A stretch of 64,000 nucleotides of DNA, taken from the sequence record MH383160.1. One strand, given 5' to 3'. How positions within the stretch are numbered: position 1 is the first letter of the stretch; each line of letters starts with the position of its first letter. The notes beneath the pieces are model-generated. The model had not been told where the DNA came from, made no database searches, and saw nothing but the letters and a program-made list of their open reading frames with translations. This document shows, one piece after another, positions 1,025 through 15,345 of this stretch. The position numbers were made by a program, and so were the translations under genes.

Positions 1025-2086
1025 CCTATTAGTTAAGTTAGTACTACAAGTTAGAGTCTATTATAAAGTACTATCTGGGCAATGTCAAATAGTACTTTAA
1101 ATGGATTCTATTACATGTCTTTCTTACGTTTTACATCGTGGTAGCGAACTGTTATTTCTTTGTTGATCTCTTCCTCGATGCGGTGAATAACTTTTTCTTT
1201 CGGGTTGAAACCTATAACGGTTTCTTTAATGATCTCCAAGCCCGTGTATTCGCCTTGTGTACCGTAACCGTATGTAAAGGTTTCGTGTCCCAGGTCTTCC
1301 CAGCGGTCGCCAATTAACGCAGACACGTAGCAAGAGTGGTAAGTATTGCCGTGTGAATCAGTCCACCGATTAACATTAATGTCAAAGGAGGTTACAATTT
1401 TCAGTTCCACTTTCTGGGCAAGGATCATAGCCATTTTTATTTCTCTCTCTTTGTTAGGAGGGGAACCGTTTCCCCTCACTTGATGTAAACTATTATACAG
1501 TACTAAGATACTTTGTCAATACTTATTTTTTGGAAAGTTTACGCATTAATTCTACGCTTTCTTGTGAACGTTTTGCTACCTGGCAAGCTGTATGGGTAGT
1601 AAACATTTTTGTATAGTCTGACGCTTTGCCACCGAACCGAGCGGCACGTTCACGGGCACTTGGAACTAATACTATTTCTTTCTTGCAGATAGTGCACTTA
1701 GCCATTTTTATTTCTCTCTTTTAGTTAGGAGGGGAACCATTCCCCTCGCTTGATGTAAACTATTATACAGTACTAAGATACTTTGTCAATACTTAATTAT
1801 TGTAAATGTCGTGAATAGTGATAAAGTTTTTACGACCGTAAACCTGCAAATCAGTATCAATAAAGTGCTTATCTAGTACATCCTCGACGCTTAACGCGGT
1901 GTCGTGGATATCTTCGTAGAATTGAGGATCTACAATCTTGCTTAAGTCATCCGGCGTTAACTTATCATTTAACCATTGAACCGCCTGGATATCTGCTTCA
2001 CGTTTCCAGTCTTCCAGGTTAGTAGTCAGTACTTGCTCGATTTCGTTAGCTGTCAGTAGAATCCGCATTTTTATGTTTCCTTATCA

Positions 2087-2260: not shown

Positions 2261-3723
2261 AGTTTTCAGTACTAGCCACCAGCATATAATAGATACATTT
2301 ATGCACCCGGTGGGCTGAATTGTTTCTATGCGTATATAATAGCAAAGGGACTGACCGGAGTCAATCCCTTTTTCAAATATTTTTAAACTTCTTTCGGGTT
2401 GCGATATGTGATAGCGTTCGGGTACATTTGTTTAATGTTATTCCATGCCTGGTTAACATTGTAACCACTTGAGCGAATCAGTTGGTTACTACCGACACCT
2501 TGAAACACTACTTCGAATAAGAATTCTTTCATGCTTTCACCTCGCGATCTGCTTTACCTTTACGCCAGGACATTACTAATTGTTCGCGTTGCCATAAGTC
2601 GAGTGATACAAAAAGTTTTGCGGTATCACTTTTAGGATACTCTCCAGTAGTACCTAACCGATAAAACAGATCTTTCAGTACTGATAATTCTACTTGAATC
2701 ATTTTATTACTCCTGATTGCGTTAATACTTCTACAATTGCATGAATGATCATAAGTACAGCTAAAACAATAATCATCGGATTCATTTGCATAAGCTGTAC
2801 TCCTTCTATTAATCTTTCAGCCAATGATCTTGAATGAATTTTTCACAGAATCCCTGTTTCATGGATTCTAACAGGCGTTCGCGGTGAGCGGCGGCATATT
2901 GCTCAGTACTATGCGTTACGCCAGGCTGATAACGTGATACCCCATCCGGTCCGATGTATTGTACATCCCACGGTTTTTCGTTAGTATCAGACCATTTACG
3001 AACGATTAGTTGACCTTGCATTTTTCTTTCCTCTCAGTGGGGAGAATCATTTCTCCCCTTCATGTAAACTATTATACAGTACTGGGTTGCATTGTCAATA
3101 GTTTTTATTCACCTTGTTTGAATTTAGTTTTCTGCATTGATTCCATGATTGCAACCAATACGCCGTGGATCTCGCTTAACGCGGAATCACTAAAAGCATT
3201 AATGAATAGTCGATCATTCTCGCGAATATTTTTAATGTACTTTTCAGCAGTAGTTGCGAATTCATTCAACGGTAGATCAAATGCTTTATCCCATGATGGA
3301 TGGCGTAATTGTAACAGTACTGGATTATCACGATCACCAGGGGAAAACGTACCAGTGATGAAACATACGCCCGGAATACTTTCGAACTGGCAACGGACTT
3401 CCTTTGTGATAGTAGTATGAATGTACATTTATTGTTATCCTCTATTAAATTAATATTACAGTTTATGAATCAATTCTTTATCTAAGCGATAGCGTACATT
3501 ATTAATAGTAACGGCATTGTTTTTAATGCTACGCTGTACAGGTCCACCAGCAATAACAAATGTTGCTTTATTGCCCCGAACAATGATAGCACTTCCAGGA
3601 TTACCGAAATCATCTTGTACTAAAATACTTGATAAGTTTTCCATTTTTTATTTCCTCTTAGTAGGGGAAGATGTTTCCCCTTGATGCAAGTACTATAACA
3701 GTACTGAAAACTAAATGCAAGTA

Positions 3724-4732: not shown

Positions 4733-7700
4733 TTATTTTAATTTTTTTCTGTCATTGATTAATGCTTTCAGTACTATACTAATGATTTGCAATGATTCAT
4801 CAATGACTATAAAATTATTTTCTTTCATTAGATGATAGTTACCATTGATTGTATATTCTAAGGAGTACTGTTTACGTTTAATTTTTGATAATGTTTCTAT
4901 TTGTTTTTGTACTGATTTCATGCTAATCATTGTTAAACGTCCTGTAACGCATTCTAACGAGATAAACGGTTGAGTACTGGCATTGTATAGGGTAATGAAT
5001 TAAAGCCCACCAGCGTTAACCAGTGGGCTATAATCTTACATCTTGCGGATAATCTTAACAGTATCTTTCACCGATTTACCGTCTTGCTGACATTGCTCGA
5101 TCATTGCGTATTGTTCTGCGGTCAGATCCTCGCCAGTTTTTGCCAGTACTGCGTCGATGAATGAATCCAGTGCGATCATTTTGTTTCTCTCTTAGGTTAA
5201 GTTAACTACTGTTGATAAAACTTATTATACAGTACTATCAAACTATGTCAATAACTTTAATAGTACTGGTAATATATTTTAGCGGTAGTCGTCGTATGCT
5301 TTATTCACCTGGCGAATGTAACTTTCAAAGGCTTCGTCTACCGTTTCATACTCCCGAACATAATCACCATAGGAAACTACATACATACCTTTTTGATCTT
5401 CAAACGTCATGATGATAGAATCCAGACCAACGATTTCAGTTTTTGCGATGATAGCCATTTTTTAATTCCTTAGTAGTGTAGTTGATAAAACTTATTATGC
5501 CAGTACTATCAAACTATGTCAATAGCACTGTGATAATATTTTTAGTTAATAATAGTCAGTGTAAAATTGTAATCCCCTGCCTGGTATAGTACTTTATCGC
5601 CGAACGTGCCGACACGTTTCATATTGCAATAGATACCCATAACACTTTTTACATCTTTGATATTCCGAACGCCTGTAATATCTTTATTAAAATAATCGTG
5701 GTCAGAAAATAAAACTTGTTTTGCATTTTTCAGTACAGTGCGGATATTAGCCATTTTGTTTTCTCTCTGTTAGTGGGGAGAACTATTCTCCCCTTGATGT
5801 AAACTATTATACAGTACTATAATCTATTGTCAAACTATTTTTTTATATTATTCGAAATCTTCTGGACCGGACTGATAATCATCTTCACCGTATGCACTTT
5901 CTAACCGCTCACCAGTGTAATCATCAGTTAAGCTATCATCCTCATAGTTCACGTCTACGCCTGTGATGTAAAACTGGCTATCGTCTGGATCATTGAAATT
6001 AATTTTTTGGATGTTTACAATAACTGTATTGATGCCCAGGACACCGCCATCAGCCGTTACAAAGTACTGATAGTTTTCACAACCGCCTGAATTGAAACCG
6101 TAATTAATTTCGGCCCGACCATCATTTAAACGCAGTGCCTGGGCAATGATTTCATTTTCAAAGTTAGATTGAGCAATTGAGATAGTCATGATTCGTTTCC
6201 TTATTACCAGGGGAAACCGTTTCCCCTTGCGATGTAAAACATTATACGCTTATTGAGATAGTTTGCAAGTACTTTTTAAAAATAGTTTTCAGTACTCAAA
6301 CATTATACAATAGATACACTCCTGCACCCTGTGGGCTAGTGAGCTATCTCTCAATGAATATATAATAGCAAACTGGCTGACCGAAGTCAACCACTTTTTC
6401 ATTTATTTTTAGCTTTTAGAATCGCCGCCTTTCGCGTCATGCCTTGCTTGATGTACTCATTTACTTTCGCTTTTTTAGCGTTTACCTTGTCTGCTTTCGT
6501 TTTAGGAGTACTGTAAATTATACCGTTAGGATTCATTTAAATCACCATAAAGAATAGATAGGTTACTAACAATGCCGCGATCATTGCACCGACCAGGGCC
6601 GAACTGTAATAAGCTAATGATTTCATTTTTTAGCCTGAAAATAATGTTTAATTTGAGCGGCGGTCAGTGCACAATTACGCAGGAAGTTTTCTGTATAACT
6701 GCGTCGAGTACTGAAAGAAAATTGACCTTTACCGTTCCCGATAGTAACATCAAACCGAGCATTATATTGTTTCATTTTGTTTCTCCTGTTCTTGGGGAGA
6801 ATCATTTCTCCCCTTCATGTAAACTATTATACAGTACTAAAAACTAATTGCAAGTATTATTTTTTAGATTTACGTAAACTTTCTACCATCTCAGGAGTAA
6901 GCCCCAGCGGGTAGGAAACCACTTCATCCACAAAACGCAAAGGGAATACCCCATCTAAAGTTGAACGTGCTTTCTTATTAGTACTCTTTTTTGATGCTTT
7001 CATTTCATATTCCTTAATTAGTGGGGAGAACTATTTCTCCACTTCATGTAAACTATTATACAGTACTAAAAACTAATTGCAAGTATTATTTTCTAAAAAA
7101 TGTTTGTATGCTGAATCAACCACTCTTTCGATAACATACGCTAACGGCACGTATCCAACTACATGACTACAATAAAAAGGACTACGATTAGAATCATCGT
7201 ATGCAAATACTTTTTCAGGATCTGCATCAATCACATACATATTAACCTTTAAGATGTCGATCTTATCCTGTACAGTAAGCATATTAATTAACCTTTTAAG
7301 TACTGGCTTAAGTAGTCTTTTTGATCTTCGGTGATTGCAGTCATCTTCCCTAGTACTGGGTTGATGATATAATCCCCTGTAACGTCCTGTGACGCATTCT
7401 CAGGGTGTTTAACGGCTGGGGTAGCCATAGCCATTGCCTGGACTTGTTCGACGCTGTAACGCTCATAAAGGCGGCATTCTTCCGGTGTTAACATAGCATC
7501 AGTACGCTTCATCGGTTTAATGATGCTTTCGATCTCATTCAGTACTTGATTAACGTTCATGGTATAATCCCCAATATAAGCGGCCTAAAACGACCGCTAA
7601 CGATGTTTTGATTAATAGGTGTAAGGTTGACGCTCAAACAATGATTGCACGTTGTACGCCCCGCTAATGGGCTTTGCTGGCAAATCGATTTTATATTGTT

Positions 7701-8417: not shown

Positions 8418-8654
8418 TGTTTTGATTCCTTTGATTTGGAAGGAGAACCGTTTTCCCCTCTCGATGTAAAACATTATACGCTAATCTATTAATCATGCAA
8501 GTACTTTTTATTACTTTTTGCAAAATACTTTAAACGCTCTCAATCGCATTCTAACGACCTTAACGCCACCAGCTAGGGCGATGTATCAGATAATCAGTTT
8601 AATGCGTTAGAATCGATTATAGGCGGTGCTAGTGGACTGGAATACTATAGACAC

Positions 8655-8692
8655 AAAAAAGCCCACTGTTTAAGGTGGGCTATTGATTCAGT
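8655..8692 (-). terminator. Intrinsic terminator, near-identical copy at 9391-9420
   Basis: AAAAAAGCCCAC-tgtttaag-GTGGGCT hairpin with U-tract on the minus strand, downstream of 8703-9185 and 9435-9734. Confidence 0.8.
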
Positions 8693-8702
8693 ACTTTAAT
8701 TG

Positions 8703-9185
8703 TTATGCTTCAACTTTGCGATGAGCTTCGATCCATTCCTCGCGAGTCATACCGCTTTCTTTGATAGCGTCCAGTACTACCGCAATGCAGTTACCGCGTA
8801 CAGGAATCAAATGTTCTTCACCGTTATCAAGTACTACAGTAACACGTTCTTGAATCCATTTTTTAGGTTTAGATTCTGGCTTATCTTCACCATACTTAAC
8901 CGCCAGGGCTTTATGTGCCATTTCTACAACTACTTCCAGATCCAATCCAGACACTGCCGCCTGGATACTGTCAATTGTTGCTTGCAGTTCGGCTTCACGG
9001 GCTTTTTTCTGTTCTTCCAGTTCTGCTACCTTTTTGGCTTGTAATTCTTTCGCTTCACTGTACGCAATGTTAAAATTGTTGCGTACTGCTTTCATGGTAT
9101 CGTTATCCAGGTCAGCCAGCAATTCAGCAGCAATAACAGTATCGTTTGAAATCAGTGCTTTCAGGAATGATTTTACATTAGCCAT
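8703..9185 (-). CDS. H-NS/StpA-like nucleoid protein with a divergent DNA-binding loop
   Basis: N-terminal coiled coil (ELQAKKVAELEEQKKAREAELQ), basic linker, and a C-terminal domain VLDNGEEHLIPVRGNCIAVVLDAIKESGMTREEW that aligns by eye with the H-NS C-terminal domain. Confidence 0.6.
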   Translation of the reverse strand: MANVKSFLKALISNDTVIAAELLADLDNDTMKAVRNNFNIAYSEAKELQAKKVAELEEQKKAREAELQATIDSIQAAVSGLDLEVVVEMAHKALAVKYGEDKPESKPKKWIQERVTVVLDNGEEHLIPVRGNCIAVVLDAIKESGMTREEWIEAHRKVEA

Positions 9186-9434
9186 TTTATAAATCCTCAA
9201 TTAAAGTTTAGTTTACGTTTATTAGTGTATCAAAGTTTTTTTGACGTGTCCAGTTTTTCGTTCGACTTACTGGCGGTCTACTTAGTGCTCCCCGTCTTGA
9301 TGTAATACATTCTACGCCTTTTTGCGGTATTGTCAACTACTTTTTTAAAACTATTTTCAAAGTATCTCAGTACTACAATACTACAAAAATAAAAAAGCCC
9401 ACTGTTTAAGGTGGGCTAGTGATTCAGTACTATA

Positions 9435-14463: not shown

Positions 14464-15345
14464 GTTAGAGGGAACCCACCAGCTTGTGCTGGTGGCATAA
14501 TGCTTTAGATTAAAATCAGTACTAATACCATTCTGTTAATATCAGTACTGTTATTACGATTTTCATATGAGGTTCAAAAAGATGTACCACCACAGGAGGA
14601 ACTATCTTTTCTGTACTGTCTCACGACAGGAGGTAGAGTAAATGAATTGTTCGCAGCAACTCATCTCTCTATGTAGAACATTATACAGTACTGAATCATA
14701 ATGTCAATAGCTTTCTTTCATTATTCAGTACTGATATTCTTGAGAACTACCCGACTACAAACATCATTATATCCCACAAATCATAAACGTCCCAACGTAA
14801 ATTTCAACTTTCGAAGATCCAACTTTTATTTCATAGGTACTCCAAAATTTTTAGGATCGAGATTTAGGATGGAGTACTAACCAACTTTTTGCTGGAGCCT
14901 CAAGGGGTAATGGAATTTTACCCCGAAGGGTAAAGGGGTAATTGAAATTAAGGTGAAAGTAATAATTCAGTACTAATCATTGCGTGATTACTTTTGATTA
15001 CATTTGATGTAATTTGAAAAATGGAAAAGGAGCTTGGAAACTACAAAGTACGGCAGACTTCCTCTGCCTACTTAGTGGCATATTAGTACTGAATCATTCA
15101 CACACATTTCCGTGCATTCTTGAGCAATCTTGTCTATACTAATCAGTACTGAATCATATATAATCATTCTGTGATTCTACGGTGCTCATATAAATGTTTA
15201 TATATGATTACTTATGACTACCTATGATTACGGGGTTTAGCCTGGGGAGAATCCTAGTGATCGCATTTGTCCAGGCTGAATTTTAACAATTCGCCTGTAC
15301 ATAAAGGTTGTTCACTAGGAGCTTCCCCTGTCTACTTGTGTTTAA

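What the first reader, a model, noticed from the sequence alone, without database searches (positions are those of the whole stretch)
8703..9185. H-NS-like protein whose DNA-binding loop is replaced (candidate dominant-negative anti-silencer)
Seen: H-NS-type architecture, but the AT-hook-like TWTGQGR loop corresponds to LIPVRGN while flanking residues (D.NGE, AV..A..E.G) are kept. Established: H-NS silences AT-rich foreign DNA; T7 gp5.5 and H-NST antagonise it. Inference: it co-oligomerises with host H-NS to de-silence this AT-rich genome, or has new sequence specificity, which would make it a candidate AGTACT binder.
Basis: partly seen in the sequence, partly recalled or inferred. Interest (0 to 1): 0.65.

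Follow-up and report, generated by a model that had tools for sequence, protein, structure and literature searches.

The report
Divergent H-NS-like protein of a jumbo coliphage
An early gene of an Asteriusvirus jumbo E. coli phage encodes a previously unannotated, very divergent relative of the bacterial DNA-silencing protein H-NS, and its changed DNA-contact loop resembles the working loop of the Pseudomonas relative MvaT, not a broken one.

Summary
Window 8703..9185 (minus strand) is a real 160-aa gene under purifying selection (dN/dS 0.04-0.19). The window is from an Asteriusvirus jumbo coliphage (99% identical to phage UB). Public records and PHROGs call the protein hypothetical, and Pfam and NCBIfam give no H-NS hit.

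Evidence that it is an H-NS relative:
- Profile-profile comparison with H-NS: 93.5% probability, E 2.3e-7, score 49. Column shuffles scored 11±2 (maximum 21). The accepted MvaT/H-NS pair scores 46.
- The predicted architecture is H-NS-like: two short helices, a long helix, a turn, a helix, a linker, then strand-strand-loop-helix-helix.
- A fold search of the C-terminal domain against 48,161 PDB chains gave only five hits with Z≥2. Rank 1 was the MvaT DNA-binding domain (Z 3.8) and rank 3 was Ler (Z 2.3).

The loop is RGN where H-NS has QGR. G131-N132 are the only invariant residues, apart from the start Met, in an 18-member phage family (20-86% identity). MvaT uses Gly-Asn in this same loop to contact the DNA minor groove.

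I therefore read it as a phage H-NS/MvaT-type DNA-binding protein, not a dead-loop dominant negative. Binding to host H-NS could not be tested. Nothing links the protein to AGTACT. It is a new variant of a known kind.

The parts
8703..9185 (-). CDS of the 160-aa H-NS-like protein (P0001), stop codon included
   Evidence: ORF list and translation. PHROG 27871, function unknown, E 5e-92. dN/dS 0.04-0.19 against phage G17 and the nearest held virus record. One copy in the nearest genome.
8895..9185 (-). N-terminal helical region, residues 1-97: predicted helices 7-12, 16-24, 28-77 and 83-97. This is the presumed oligomerisation domain.
   Evidence: AlphaFold2 model, mean pLDDT 83. The helix order matches the published H-NS a1-a2-a3-turn-a4 layout (PMC6936261). 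Residues 1-70 have no significant profile similarity to H-NS 1-60. Family member P0149 hits Pfam Histone_HNS_N at 21.5 bits, below the 24.5 cut-off.
8895..9005 (-). Residues 61-97: end of the long helix, the turn (SGLDLE) and the next helix. It resembles the H-NS 'site 2' helix-turn-helix (H-NS GIDPNE).
   Evidence: Included in the hhalign match. Taken alone it scores 19.3; shuffles gave 7.0 +/- 1.6, maximum 12.9. G80 is nearly invariant in the family.
8847..8894 (-). Linker, residues 98-113 (pLDDT dips to about 62), with the conserved KK(W/Y) at residues 108-110
   Evidence: Model confidence profile and family columns. Over the stretch K97-R114 the net charge is about +2, hand-counted from the sequence. 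By the computation, the whole tail from residue 97 is net -2, whereas the H-NS tails are +2 to +7.
8721..8846 (-). C-terminal H-NS/MvaT-type domain, residues 114-155: strand 114-118, strand 124-128, loop 129-134, helix 135-144, helix 148-155
   Evidence: Models. VIA-align over 48,161 PDB chains put 2mxf (MvaT Ctd-DNA) at rank 1, Z 3.8, rmsd 2.8 A, 44 of 47 residues aligned, and 2lev (Ler Ctd-DNA) at rank 3, Z 2.3. The second look gave the same two families. Foldseek ranked 2l93 (Salmonella H-NS Ctd) fourth, TM 0.44/0.49 over 47 of 49 columns, E 1.9. hhalign of the domain alone scored 24.5; shuffles reached at most 14.2.
8787..8804 (-). Loop P128-V-R-G-N-C133, which aligns with H-NS T110-G-Q-G-R-T115. 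G131-N132 are encoded at 8790..8795.
   Evidence: Read directly from the sequence and the alignments. G131 and N132 are invariant in 18 of 18 family members. Position 130 varies (R/N/T/K/S/H).
8844..8846 (-). R114 at the start of strand 1. It is conserved in 17 of 18 family members and is a candidate for the second arm of an MvaT-like R...G-N 'pincer'.
   Evidence: Family columns. The functional assignment is inference from MvaT Arg80. No coordinates were available to check the geometry.
9309..9336 (-). Sigma-70-type promoter TTGACA-16-TAGAAT (11 of 12 matches) that serves this gene. The leader is about 117 nt.
   Evidence: Consensus scan. It is one of 17 near-perfect promoters in the window, all on the minus strand. 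Function is inferred, not shown.
9194..9198 (-). Shine-Dalgarno GAGGA, 8 nt before the ATG
   Evidence: Read from the sequence.
8660..8681 (-). Intrinsic terminator hairpin plus T-run just after the stop codon
   Evidence: Scan. An identical hairpin sequence lies upstream at 9396..9417. Phage G17's record annotates terminators at both matching places.
9396..9417 (-). Identical terminator hairpin that ends the upstream gene, so the H-NS-like gene forms its own promoter-to-terminator unit
   Evidence: Scan and the G17 annotation.

Best explanation
The gene encodes a full-length but very divergent member of the H-NS/MvaT superfamily of nucleoid-associated proteins. It belongs to a small family found so far in Asteriusvirus genomes and in short, phage-like metagenomic contigs.

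Shown or predicted with support:
- An N-terminal helical domain with H-NS-like helix order, including a site-2-like helix-turn-helix.
- A flexible linker.
- A C-terminal strand-strand-loop-helix-helix domain of the H-NS/MvaT/Ler fold.
- A loop of H-NS length that ends in an invariant Gly-Asn where H-NS has Gly-Arg.

Inferred:
- As in MvaT, the Gly-Asn backbone and the Asn side chain enter the minor groove of AT-rich DNA, helped by R114 and, in the Asteriusvirus proteins, by R130.
- The N-terminal domain makes homo-oligomers, so the protein coats or bridges AT-rich DNA.
- It has its own strong sigma-70-type promoter within an array of such promoters, so it is probably made early by host RNA polymerase.
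- The most likely role is a phage-encoded nucleoid protein that occupies the 35% GC phage genome, or AT-rich host DNA, in competition with host H-NS. That would be Ler-type counter-silencing by DNA binding, not poisoning of H-NS filaments.
For: Homology:
- hhalign of the phage family against H-NS plus plasmid paralogues gives 93.5%, E 2.3e-7, score 49.0. Shuffles gave 11.1 +/- 2.2 and the reversed alignment 24.9.
- The same method gives 92.1%, E 6.2e-7, score 46.1 for MvaT against H-NS, two accepted relatives.
- Pairwise BLASTP gives E 0.002 in the expected register.
- Family member P0149 scores 21.5 bits on Pfam Histone_HNS_N.
- The ESM Atlas nearest named clusters are H-NS families, though the scores are weak (0.75-0.76).

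Fold:
- The AlphaFold2 models have pLDDT 83 and 80.
- Of 48,161 PDB representatives only five reach Z>=2. Rank 1 is the MvaT Ctd-DNA complex (Z 3.8, 44 of 47 aligned) and rank 3 is the Ler Ctd-DNA complex. The second look agrees.
- Salmonella H-NS Ctd has the best TM-score in the Foldseek list.

Loop function:
- G131-N132 are invariant across 20-86% identity. R114 is kept in 17 of 18 members, K/R138 in 15 of 18 and R/H148 in 18 of 18.
- In MvaT, Gly99-Asn100 and Arg80 are the minor-groove contacts, and N100A and R80A weaken both binding and silencing (PMC4466236).

Selection and expression:
- dN/dS is 0.04-0.19.
- The gene has an 11/12 sigma-70 promoter and flanking terminators.
Against: - No Pfam or NCBIfam H-NS model hits this protein, and PF00816 hits none of the 18 family members. 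PDB sequence searches find no H-NS, MvaT or Ler chain.
- The structural Z-scores are low in absolute terms (3.8 and 2.3), as expected for a 45-residue domain. The Foldseek E-value for H-NS is 1.9.
- The window's C-terminal domain is acidic (net -3, pI 5.2), with a tail of net -2. H-NS domains are +1 to +3 with tails of +2 to +7.
- The Asteriusvirus proteins have Leu at position 138, where 15 of 18 family members have Lys or Arg, aligned with H-NS K120. They also lack MvaT's lysine network.
- By sequence profile the family does not match MvaT (1.3%, E 0.04).
- DNA binding, oligomerisation, time of expression and biological role are all untested. The RNA libraries gave only contig fragments, which cannot show transcription.
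Confidence: 0.55

Rival explanations
1. One reading: a dominant-negative anti-silencer. The N-terminal domain co-oligomerises with host H-NS or StpA. The altered C-terminal domain no longer binds DNA, so mixed filaments fail and the AT-rich phage genome is de-silenced.
For: - The site-2-like helix-turn-helix resembles that of H-NS (score 19.3; shuffles at most 12.9).
- The C-terminal domain of the window's protein is acidic and has lost the conserved K/R138, and the linker is only weakly basic.
- The gene looks like an early gene.
- Truncated H-NS paralogues such as H-NST are known to work this way (PMC7074111).
Against: - The loop is the most conserved part of the family (G131-N132 in 18 of 18) and the whole C-terminal domain is under purifying selection. 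Known dominant negatives simply lack the domain.
- Gly-Asn is a working minor-groove contact in MvaT.
- The N-terminal 70 residues, which would form site 1, show no significant similarity to H-NS, and the NIR..R..ARE residues invariant in H-NS are absent.
- The interaction could not be modelled.
Confidence: 0.17
2. A sequence-specific DNA binder with a new specificity, for example for the over-represented palindrome AGTACT.
For: AGTACT occurs 260 times where 21 are expected, and CAGTACTG is about 67-fold enriched, so a reader of this motif may well exist in this phage. The loop differs from every H-NS loop sampled.
Against: - Nothing connects the motif to this protein.
- The fold family reads minor-groove shape in AT-rich DNA with low specificity (PMC6936261).
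- AGTACT has G/C at positions 2 and 5.
- 12 of the 17 strongest promoters carry the motif in the spacer as AGTACTGTATAAT, an extended -10 context, which points to the transcription machinery.
- The distant family members come from other phages whose motif content is unknown.
Confidence: 0.05
3. Not an H-NS relative in function. It could be a helical phage protein, such as a scaffold or adaptor, whose small C-terminal domain resembles H-NS by convergence and binds a protein or RNA instead of DNA.
For: - Curated family models do not hit it.
- There is a weak PHROG match to a head scaffolding family (E 0.0046).
- Structural Z-scores are below 4.
- The domain is acidic.
Against: - The sequence-profile evidence and the fold evidence, which rest on different methods, both point to the same superfamily and the same register.
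- The match covers both the site-2 region and the C-terminal domain, in the same order as in H-NS.
- The gene sits in an early-promoter array, not among structural genes.
Confidence: 0.13

Closest known systems
H-NS / StpA and plasmid paralogues (Sfh, Sfx and similar; Pfam PF22470 + PF00816)
   Same: - Same domain order: two short helices, a long helix, a turn and a helix, then a linker, then a strand-strand-loop-helix-helix domain.
- Same loop length: Gly of the NGE turn to Gly of the loop is 9 residues in both.
- Shared D.NGE turn, the A-V-[IV]...A...G helix and the F/W-[IL] C-terminal motif.
- Profile match at 93.5%.
   Different: - No curated model hits it.
- The N-terminal site-1 sequence is unrelated.
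- The W109-T-G-Q-G-R hook is I-P-V-R-G-N, with Asn never Arg. The 52 distinct H-NS-family sequences compared, 42 of them drawn from bacterial genomes, show GR, GK, GL or GP but no GN.
- The tail is acidic rather than basic.
- It is encoded by a virulent jumbo phage. tblastn with H-NS finds no phage among 50,697 phage records.
MvaT / MvaU / TurB of Pseudomonas (structures 2MXE and 2MXF)
   Same: - Best structural match to the C-terminal domain (Z 3.8).
- An invariant Gly-Asn in the DNA-contact loop.
- A conserved Arg N-terminal to strand 1 that could act like MvaT Arg80 in the 'AT-pincer'.
   Different: - No significant sequence-profile similarity.
- MvaT's loop is one residue shorter and lacks the position where this protein has R130.
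- MvaT's lysine network is absent here.
- MvaT lacks the two short N-terminal helices that the phage model has.
Ler (LEE-encoded regulator of EPEC/EHEC)
   Same: A horizontally acquired H-NS-family protein whose C-terminal domain binds DNA and which counteracts H-NS silencing without being a truncated poison. It is the third-ranked structural match (Z 2.3, 40 residues). It is the best functional analogy for a DNA-binding counter-silencer.
   Different: Ler keeps an Arg in the hook and has detectable sequence similarity to the C-terminal part of H-NS (PMC7074111, Table 1). It is encoded in a pathogenicity island, not a phage. No functional data exist for the phage protein.
H-NST, T7 gp5.5, T4 Arn and LUZ24 Mip (proteins that antagonise H-NS or MvaT by binding the protein)
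   Same: Possible shared purpose: relieving xenogeneic silencing of AT-rich foreign DNA early in infection.
   Different: According to the review read here, H-NST shares only the N-terminal domain with H-NS (PMC7074111). The phage protein here keeps a conserved full-length H-NS-type architecture, including the DNA-binding fold.
Phage EPV1 H-NS and mycobacteriophage Lsr2 homologues
   Same: Precedents for full-length xenogeneic-silencer homologues encoded by phages (PMC7074111).
   Different: Those are close copies of the host's own silencer. This family is far from E. coli H-NS (27% identity over 66 residues) and forms its own phage-borne lineage.

Membership tests
H-NS family (Pfam Histone_HNS PF00816, C-terminal domain) | Scores above the curated gathering threshold of the family HMM | tested here: not met
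   No PF00816 hit for P0001 at E<=10, for any of the 18 family members at E<=1 or in the nearest phage genome. The same model finds hns and stpA in E. coli.
H-NS family (Pfam Histone_HNS_N PF22470, N-terminal domain) | Scores above the curated gathering threshold | tested here: not met
   No hit for P0001. The best family member, P0149, scores 21.5 bits, E 2.1e-4, against a cut-off of 24.5. hhalign of residues 1-70 against H-NS 1-60 scores 12.8, with shuffles up to 11.3.
H-NS superfamily (remote homology) | Significant profile-profile similarity in the right order and register | tested here: met
   hhalign gives 93.5%, E 2.3e-7, score 49.0 over 80 columns covering site 2, the linker and the C-terminal domain. 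Controls scored 11.1 +/- 2.2, maximum 21.4. The score is comparable to MvaT against H-NS, 46.1. With a larger and rougher H-NS alignment the result drops to 65.5%, E 5.9e-5.
H-NS superfamily | C-terminal domain fold: two-stranded hairpin, DNA-contact loop, helix, short helix | tested here: met
   The model shows E114-118, E124-128, loop, H135-144, H148-155. The top PDB matches are MvaT Ctd (Z 3.8), Ler Ctd (Z 2.3) and H-NS Ctd (TM 0.44/0.49). This rests on a prediction, and the absolute scores are low.
H-NS superfamily | N-terminal oligomerisation domain with two dimerisation sites (site 1 and the site 2 helix-turn-helix) | tested here: inconclusive
   The predicted helix order matches (one search compared with PMC6936261), and site 2 has modest profile support. 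Fold searches of the full model returned only generic helical matches. Oligomerisation could not be modelled.
H-NS / Lsr2 | Q/RGR AT-hook-like motif in the loop | tested here: not met
   The loop reads R130-G131-N132. Asn is invariant in 18 of 18 and the first position is variable.
MvaT family | 'AT-pincer': Gly-Asn in loop 2 plus an Arg before strand 1 | tested here: inconclusive
   Gly-Asn is present and invariant, and R114 is conserved in 17 of 18. Whether R114 sits where MvaT Arg80 does could not be checked, because no coordinates were available. The loop has H-NS length, not MvaT length.
MvaT family | Sequence similarity to MvaT/MvaU and the lysine network (K81, K83, K97, K102, K105, K108) | tested here: not met
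   hhalign against 41 MvaT-family sequences gives 1.3%, E 0.04. The window's domain has net charge -3 and Leu at the conserved K/R138 position.
Truncated dominant-negative H-NS antagonists (H-NST type) | H-NS-like N-terminal domain without a DNA-binding domain | tested here: not met
   A conserved C-terminal domain is present and under purifying selection. The N-terminal region is the least H-NS-like part.
Any H-NS-like protein | Binds AT-rich DNA and forms filaments or bridges; interacts with H-NS or StpA | not testable with these tools
There are no experimental data. The literature search found no paper that links Asteriusvirus phages with H-NS.

The most novel reading that the evidence does not exclude
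Virulent jumbo coliphages, and a wider set of uncultured phages, carry their own lineage of H-NS-superfamily proteins. These combine an H-NS-length loop with an MvaT-type Gly-Asn contact (here R-G-N). The protein is made early and coats the AT-rich phage genome, keeping host H-NS off it. That would be a Ler-like counter-silencer in a lytic phage, with a third kind of minor-groove hook that may have its own sequence or shape preference.
Probability: 0.3. Interest if true: 0.65.

Novelty: new variant of a known kind. Interest (0 to 1): 0.5.

Why it matters
H-NS silences AT-rich foreign DNA, and lytic phages with AT-rich genomes must deal with it. The known coliphage answers are small proteins that bind H-NS itself. 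This gene suggests another route: the phage brings its own full-length H-NS-type protein. No curated model detects this protein, and a tblastn search of 50,697 phage records with E. coli H-NS finds no phage hit.

The result also gives the structure-function picture of xenogeneic silencers a natural intermediate. It has an H-NS scaffold and loop length but the Gly-Asn contact of MvaT. That makes the question of how loop chemistry sets DNA preference directly testable, and the family alignment supplies obvious point mutants (N132, R130, R114, L138K).

For annotation, it gives a function hypothesis to PHROG 27871 and to one 'hypothetical protein' present in all sequenced Asteriusvirus genomes examined.

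Tried and rejected
- Pfam, NCBIfam and PDB sequence searches with the protein and with two profiles gave no H-NS, MvaT or Ler hit. The link rests on profile-profile and fold comparison only.
- Foldseek and VIA-align with the full-length model returned only generic long-helix matches. The N-terminal domain therefore remains structurally unassigned.
- The ESM Atlas gave weak leads for the whole protein (0.75-0.76, H-NS clusters) and nothing for the C-terminal part.
- The search for related loci in viral contigs failed because the family alignment is too divergent.
- Two attempts to widen the H-NS set returned only close orthologues. Diversity came from plasmid paralogues and from genome searches.
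- Public RNA libraries from wastewater hold short contigs of relatives over the region, but contigs cannot show transcription, strand or level, so expression is not shown.
- I considered a scaffold-protein reading (PHROG 206, E 0.0046) and rejected it because the gene lies in an early-promoter array and the fold evidence points elsewhere.
- I considered and rejected the AGTACT-binder idea.

Full report
**What is there**

The finding's coordinates hold one ORF on the minus strand. It starts with ATG at 9185, stops at 8705..8703 and encodes 160 aa (P0001).
- A GAGGA ribosome-binding site lies 8 nt upstream of the ATG.
- A sigma-70-type promoter, TTGACA-16-TAGAAT, lies at 9336..9309.
- Two identical terminator hairpins flank the gene, at 9417..9396 and 8681..8660, so the gene forms its own transcription unit.
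- The first 16 kb of the window carry 11 perfect 12/12 sigma-70 consensus promoters, all on the minus strand. This looks like an early region read by host RNA polymerase. That reading is inference; no transcript data are usable.

**Source**

The window is from an Asteriusvirus jumbo coliphage. It is 99.2% identical to Escherichia phage UB and 92-97% identical to slurp01, SP27, G17, PBECO4 and others.
- The orthologue is annotated 'hypothetical protein' throughout, and it belongs to PHROG 27871, function unknown.
- The gene is single-copy in the nearest held genome.
- It evolves under purifying selection, with dN/dS 0.04-0.19.

**Checking the observation**

Curated models do not see H-NS here. 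There is no Pfam or NCBIfam hit, no PF00816 hit in the nearest genome and no PDB sequence hit.

BLASTP against E. coli H-NS gives 27% identity over 66 residues, E 0.002 for that single comparison, with DNGEE over DENGE, RGN over QGR, the AV..A..E.G helix in register and EEWI over DDFL.

**The family**

A word-based search found only 22 close relatives. A full HMMER search of 1.8 billion representatives with the family profile added about a dozen proteins of 150-225 aa at 20-50% identity.
- They lie on short contigs of small, same-strand unknown ORFs, which looks phage-like.
- In the 18-sequence alignment the only invariant residues besides Met1 are G131 and N132.
- G80, R114, G122, G145 and I152 are nearly invariant.
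- Position 130, Arg in the window, varies.

**Homology to H-NS**

Profile-profile comparison with H-NS/StpA gave 81%, E 1.2e-5. Adding divergent plasmid paralogues raised this to 93.5%, E 2.3e-7, score 49.0 over 80 columns, covering phage residues 71-158 and H-NS residues 58-137.

| Comparison (hhalign) | Score | Control or note |
|---|---|---|
| Phage family vs H-NS + plasmid paralogues | 49.0 | 60 column shuffles 11.1 ± 2.2, maximum 21.4; reversed 24.9 |
| C-terminal domain alone | 24.5 | shuffles ≤ 14.2 |
| Site-2-like region alone | 19.3 | shuffles ≤ 12.9 |
| N-terminal 70 residues | 12.8 | shuffles ≤ 11.3, so not significant |
| MvaT family vs H-NS (yardstick) | 46.1 | 92.1%, E 6.2e-7 |
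| Phage family vs larger, rougher H-NS alignment | 36.9 | 65.5%, E 5.9e-5 |
| Phage family vs MvaT | 17.9 | 1.3%, E 0.04, not significant |

The phage family is therefore about as close to H-NS as MvaT is. One further point: family member P0149 reaches 21.5 bits on Pfam Histone_HNS_N, just under the 24.5 cut-off.

**Structure**

AlphaFold2 with the family alignment gave a model with pLDDT 83. It predicts helices 7-12, 16-24, 28-77 and 83-97, a low-confidence linker, strands 114-118 and 124-128, a loop at 129-134, and helices 135-144 and 148-155. This is the published H-NS layout: a1, a2 and a long a3 for site 1, an a3-turn-a4 helix-turn-helix for site 2, a linker, and the DNA-binding domain (PMC6936261).

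Fold searches with the whole model only found generic helices. I therefore folded residues 104-160 alone (pLDDT 80).
- VIA-align against 48,161 PDB representatives gave only five chains with Z≥2.
- Rank 1 is the MvaT C-terminal domain in complex with DNA (2mxf: Z 3.8, rmsd 2.8 Å, 44 of 47 residues aligned).
- Rank 3 is the Ler C-terminal domain with DNA (2lev: Z 2.3).
- Re-aligning Foldseek's top 738 chains left only MvaT (2mxe, Z 3.8) and Ler above Z 2.
- Foldseek ranked the Salmonella H-NS domain (2l93) fourth. It had the best TM-scores in the list (0.44/0.49 over 47 of 49 columns), but E was 1.9.

The absolute scores are low, as they must be for 45 residues. Even so, the few hits all come from one small superfamily.

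**The loop**

The evidence says it has changed type.
- In MvaT, the backbone of Gly99-Asn100 and the Asn100 side chain enter the minor groove. [quoted passage not shown] N100A and R80A weaken both binding and silencing (PMC4466236).
- The phage family has an invariant Gly-Asn at the position of the H-NS Gly-Arg, and a conserved Arg (R114) at the start of strand 1. The Asteriusvirus proteins also have an Arg at the H-NS Gln position.
- The spacing on both sides of the loop is that of H-NS, not of MvaT. From the Gly of the NGE turn to the Gly of the loop is 9 residues, and the hydrophobic residue and Lys follow at +5 and +6.
- The 52 distinct H-NS-family sequences compared (ten from the H-NS, StpA and plasmid-paralogue alignment, 42 from bacterial genomes) show GR, GK, GL or GP in this loop, but never GN.
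- 38 of the 41 MvaT-family sequences have GGN.

The phage loop is thus a hybrid: H-NS geometry with MvaT chemistry. Its invariance argues that it does something.

**Caveats on DNA binding**

- The window's C-terminal domain is net -3 (pI 5.2), and the tail from residue 97 is net -2. H-NS domains are +1 to +3, with tails of +2 to +7.
- Some distant family members are basic (+2 to +4).
- The Asteriusvirus proteins carry Leu at position 138, where 15 of 18 members have Lys or Arg, aligned with H-NS K120.

DNA binding is therefore likely for the family as a whole. For this particular protein it is plausible but not certain, and it may be weaker or depend on oligomerisation.

**Dominant-negative model**

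This model needs an N-terminal domain that fits host H-NS. That is the part with no detectable similarity, and it lacks the NIR..R..ARE residues that are invariant in H-NS. Known poisons of this type drop the DNA-binding domain altogether (PMC7074111). Here the domain is conserved. Heteromerisation through the site-2-like element therefore stays open.

**AGTACT**

The motif is truly over-represented. There are 260 sites where 21 are expected, which makes it the top hexamer, and CAGTACTG is about 67-fold enriched. Twelve of the 17 strongest promoters have it in the spacer as AGTACTGTATAAT. The gene's own promoter does not. The two sites inside the gene come from V-V-L encoded as GTA GTA CTx. 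Nothing ties the motif to this protein.

**Comparison and novelty**

Phage-borne silencer homologues are known, for example EPV1 H-NS and mycobacteriophage Lsr2. Those are close copies of host genes. tblastn with E. coli H-NS finds no phage among 50,697 phage records, and I found no paper that links Asteriusvirus phages with H-NS.

This is a new, divergent, phage-borne branch of a known superfamily with a new loop variant. By function it probably works like H-NS, MvaT or Ler. By curated-model membership it fails Pfam's thresholds and lacks the Q/RGR motif.

**Verdict**

- I put remote homology to the H-NS superfamily at about 0.85.
- I put the full mechanism (an early, self-oligomerising, minor-groove-binding phage nucleoid protein or counter-silencer) at about 0.55 or less for its individual steps.
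- Interest is 0.5.

Noticed in passing
whole window; e.g. 8500, 8690, 8773, 8830, 9369: AGTACT occurs 260 times where about 21 are expected and is the most over-represented hexamer (12-fold). CAGTACTG occurs 45 times, about 67-fold over expectation, and GTAC is the top tetramer (2.8-fold). Sites are densest in the first 20 kb.
   Followed up: partly
minus strand, e.g. 1519..1492, 1789..1762, 3098..3071, 5251..5224, 5833..5806, 14707..14680, 43776, 55042, 59355: There are 17 near-perfect sigma-70 consensus promoters (TTGACA-N16/17-TAnAAT), all on the minus strand. Twelve carry AGTACT in the spacer, mostly as AGTACTGTATAAT, which gives an extended -10 TG. Promoters account for under a tenth of the AGTACT sites.
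   Followed up: partly
9396..9417 and 8660..8681 (minus strand): The same 22-nt terminator hairpin sequence (AGCCCACCTTAAACAGTGGGCT) occurs on both sides of the gene. Repeated promoter and terminator modules may make such small genes exchangeable cassettes.
   Followed up: no
8487 to 9289: One contig of run X1 joins 8487 to 9289 and skips 801 bases, which is exactly the H-NS-like gene with its terminator and leader (table 5). Support is a single contig with a 33-nt side at 85% likeness. It may be a relative that lacks the cassette, or an artefact of repeated flanks.
   Followed up: no
L006:698-1291 and L006:2047-2640: A distant, uncultured phage-like contig carries two paralogues of the family 61% identical to each other, about 750 bp apart with a small ORF between them. 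This recalls the H-NS/StpA and MvaT/MvaU pairs.
   Followed up: partly
L006, L007, L008, L098: In the distant branch the family gene is followed, in conserved order, by a 121-aa ORF and, directly or after one small ORF, by an 86-aa DksA/TraR-type zinc-finger ORF. This may be a small transcription-takeover module. The window has no such neighbours.
   Followed up: no
L113, L116, L118, L119, L128, L138, L139 (bacterial genomes): Bona fide chromosomal H-NS-family proteins vary at the last hook residue: GKGP, GRGL and GVGK occur in place of GQGR or GRGR. The final Arg is therefore not universal even within Pfam-recognised members.
   Followed up: no
9186..9308 (minus strand): The leader between the predicted promoter and the start codon is unusually long, about 117 nt. 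It contains two weaker promoter-like sites, at 9252..9224 and 9233..9205. It was not examined for RNA structure.
   Followed up: no
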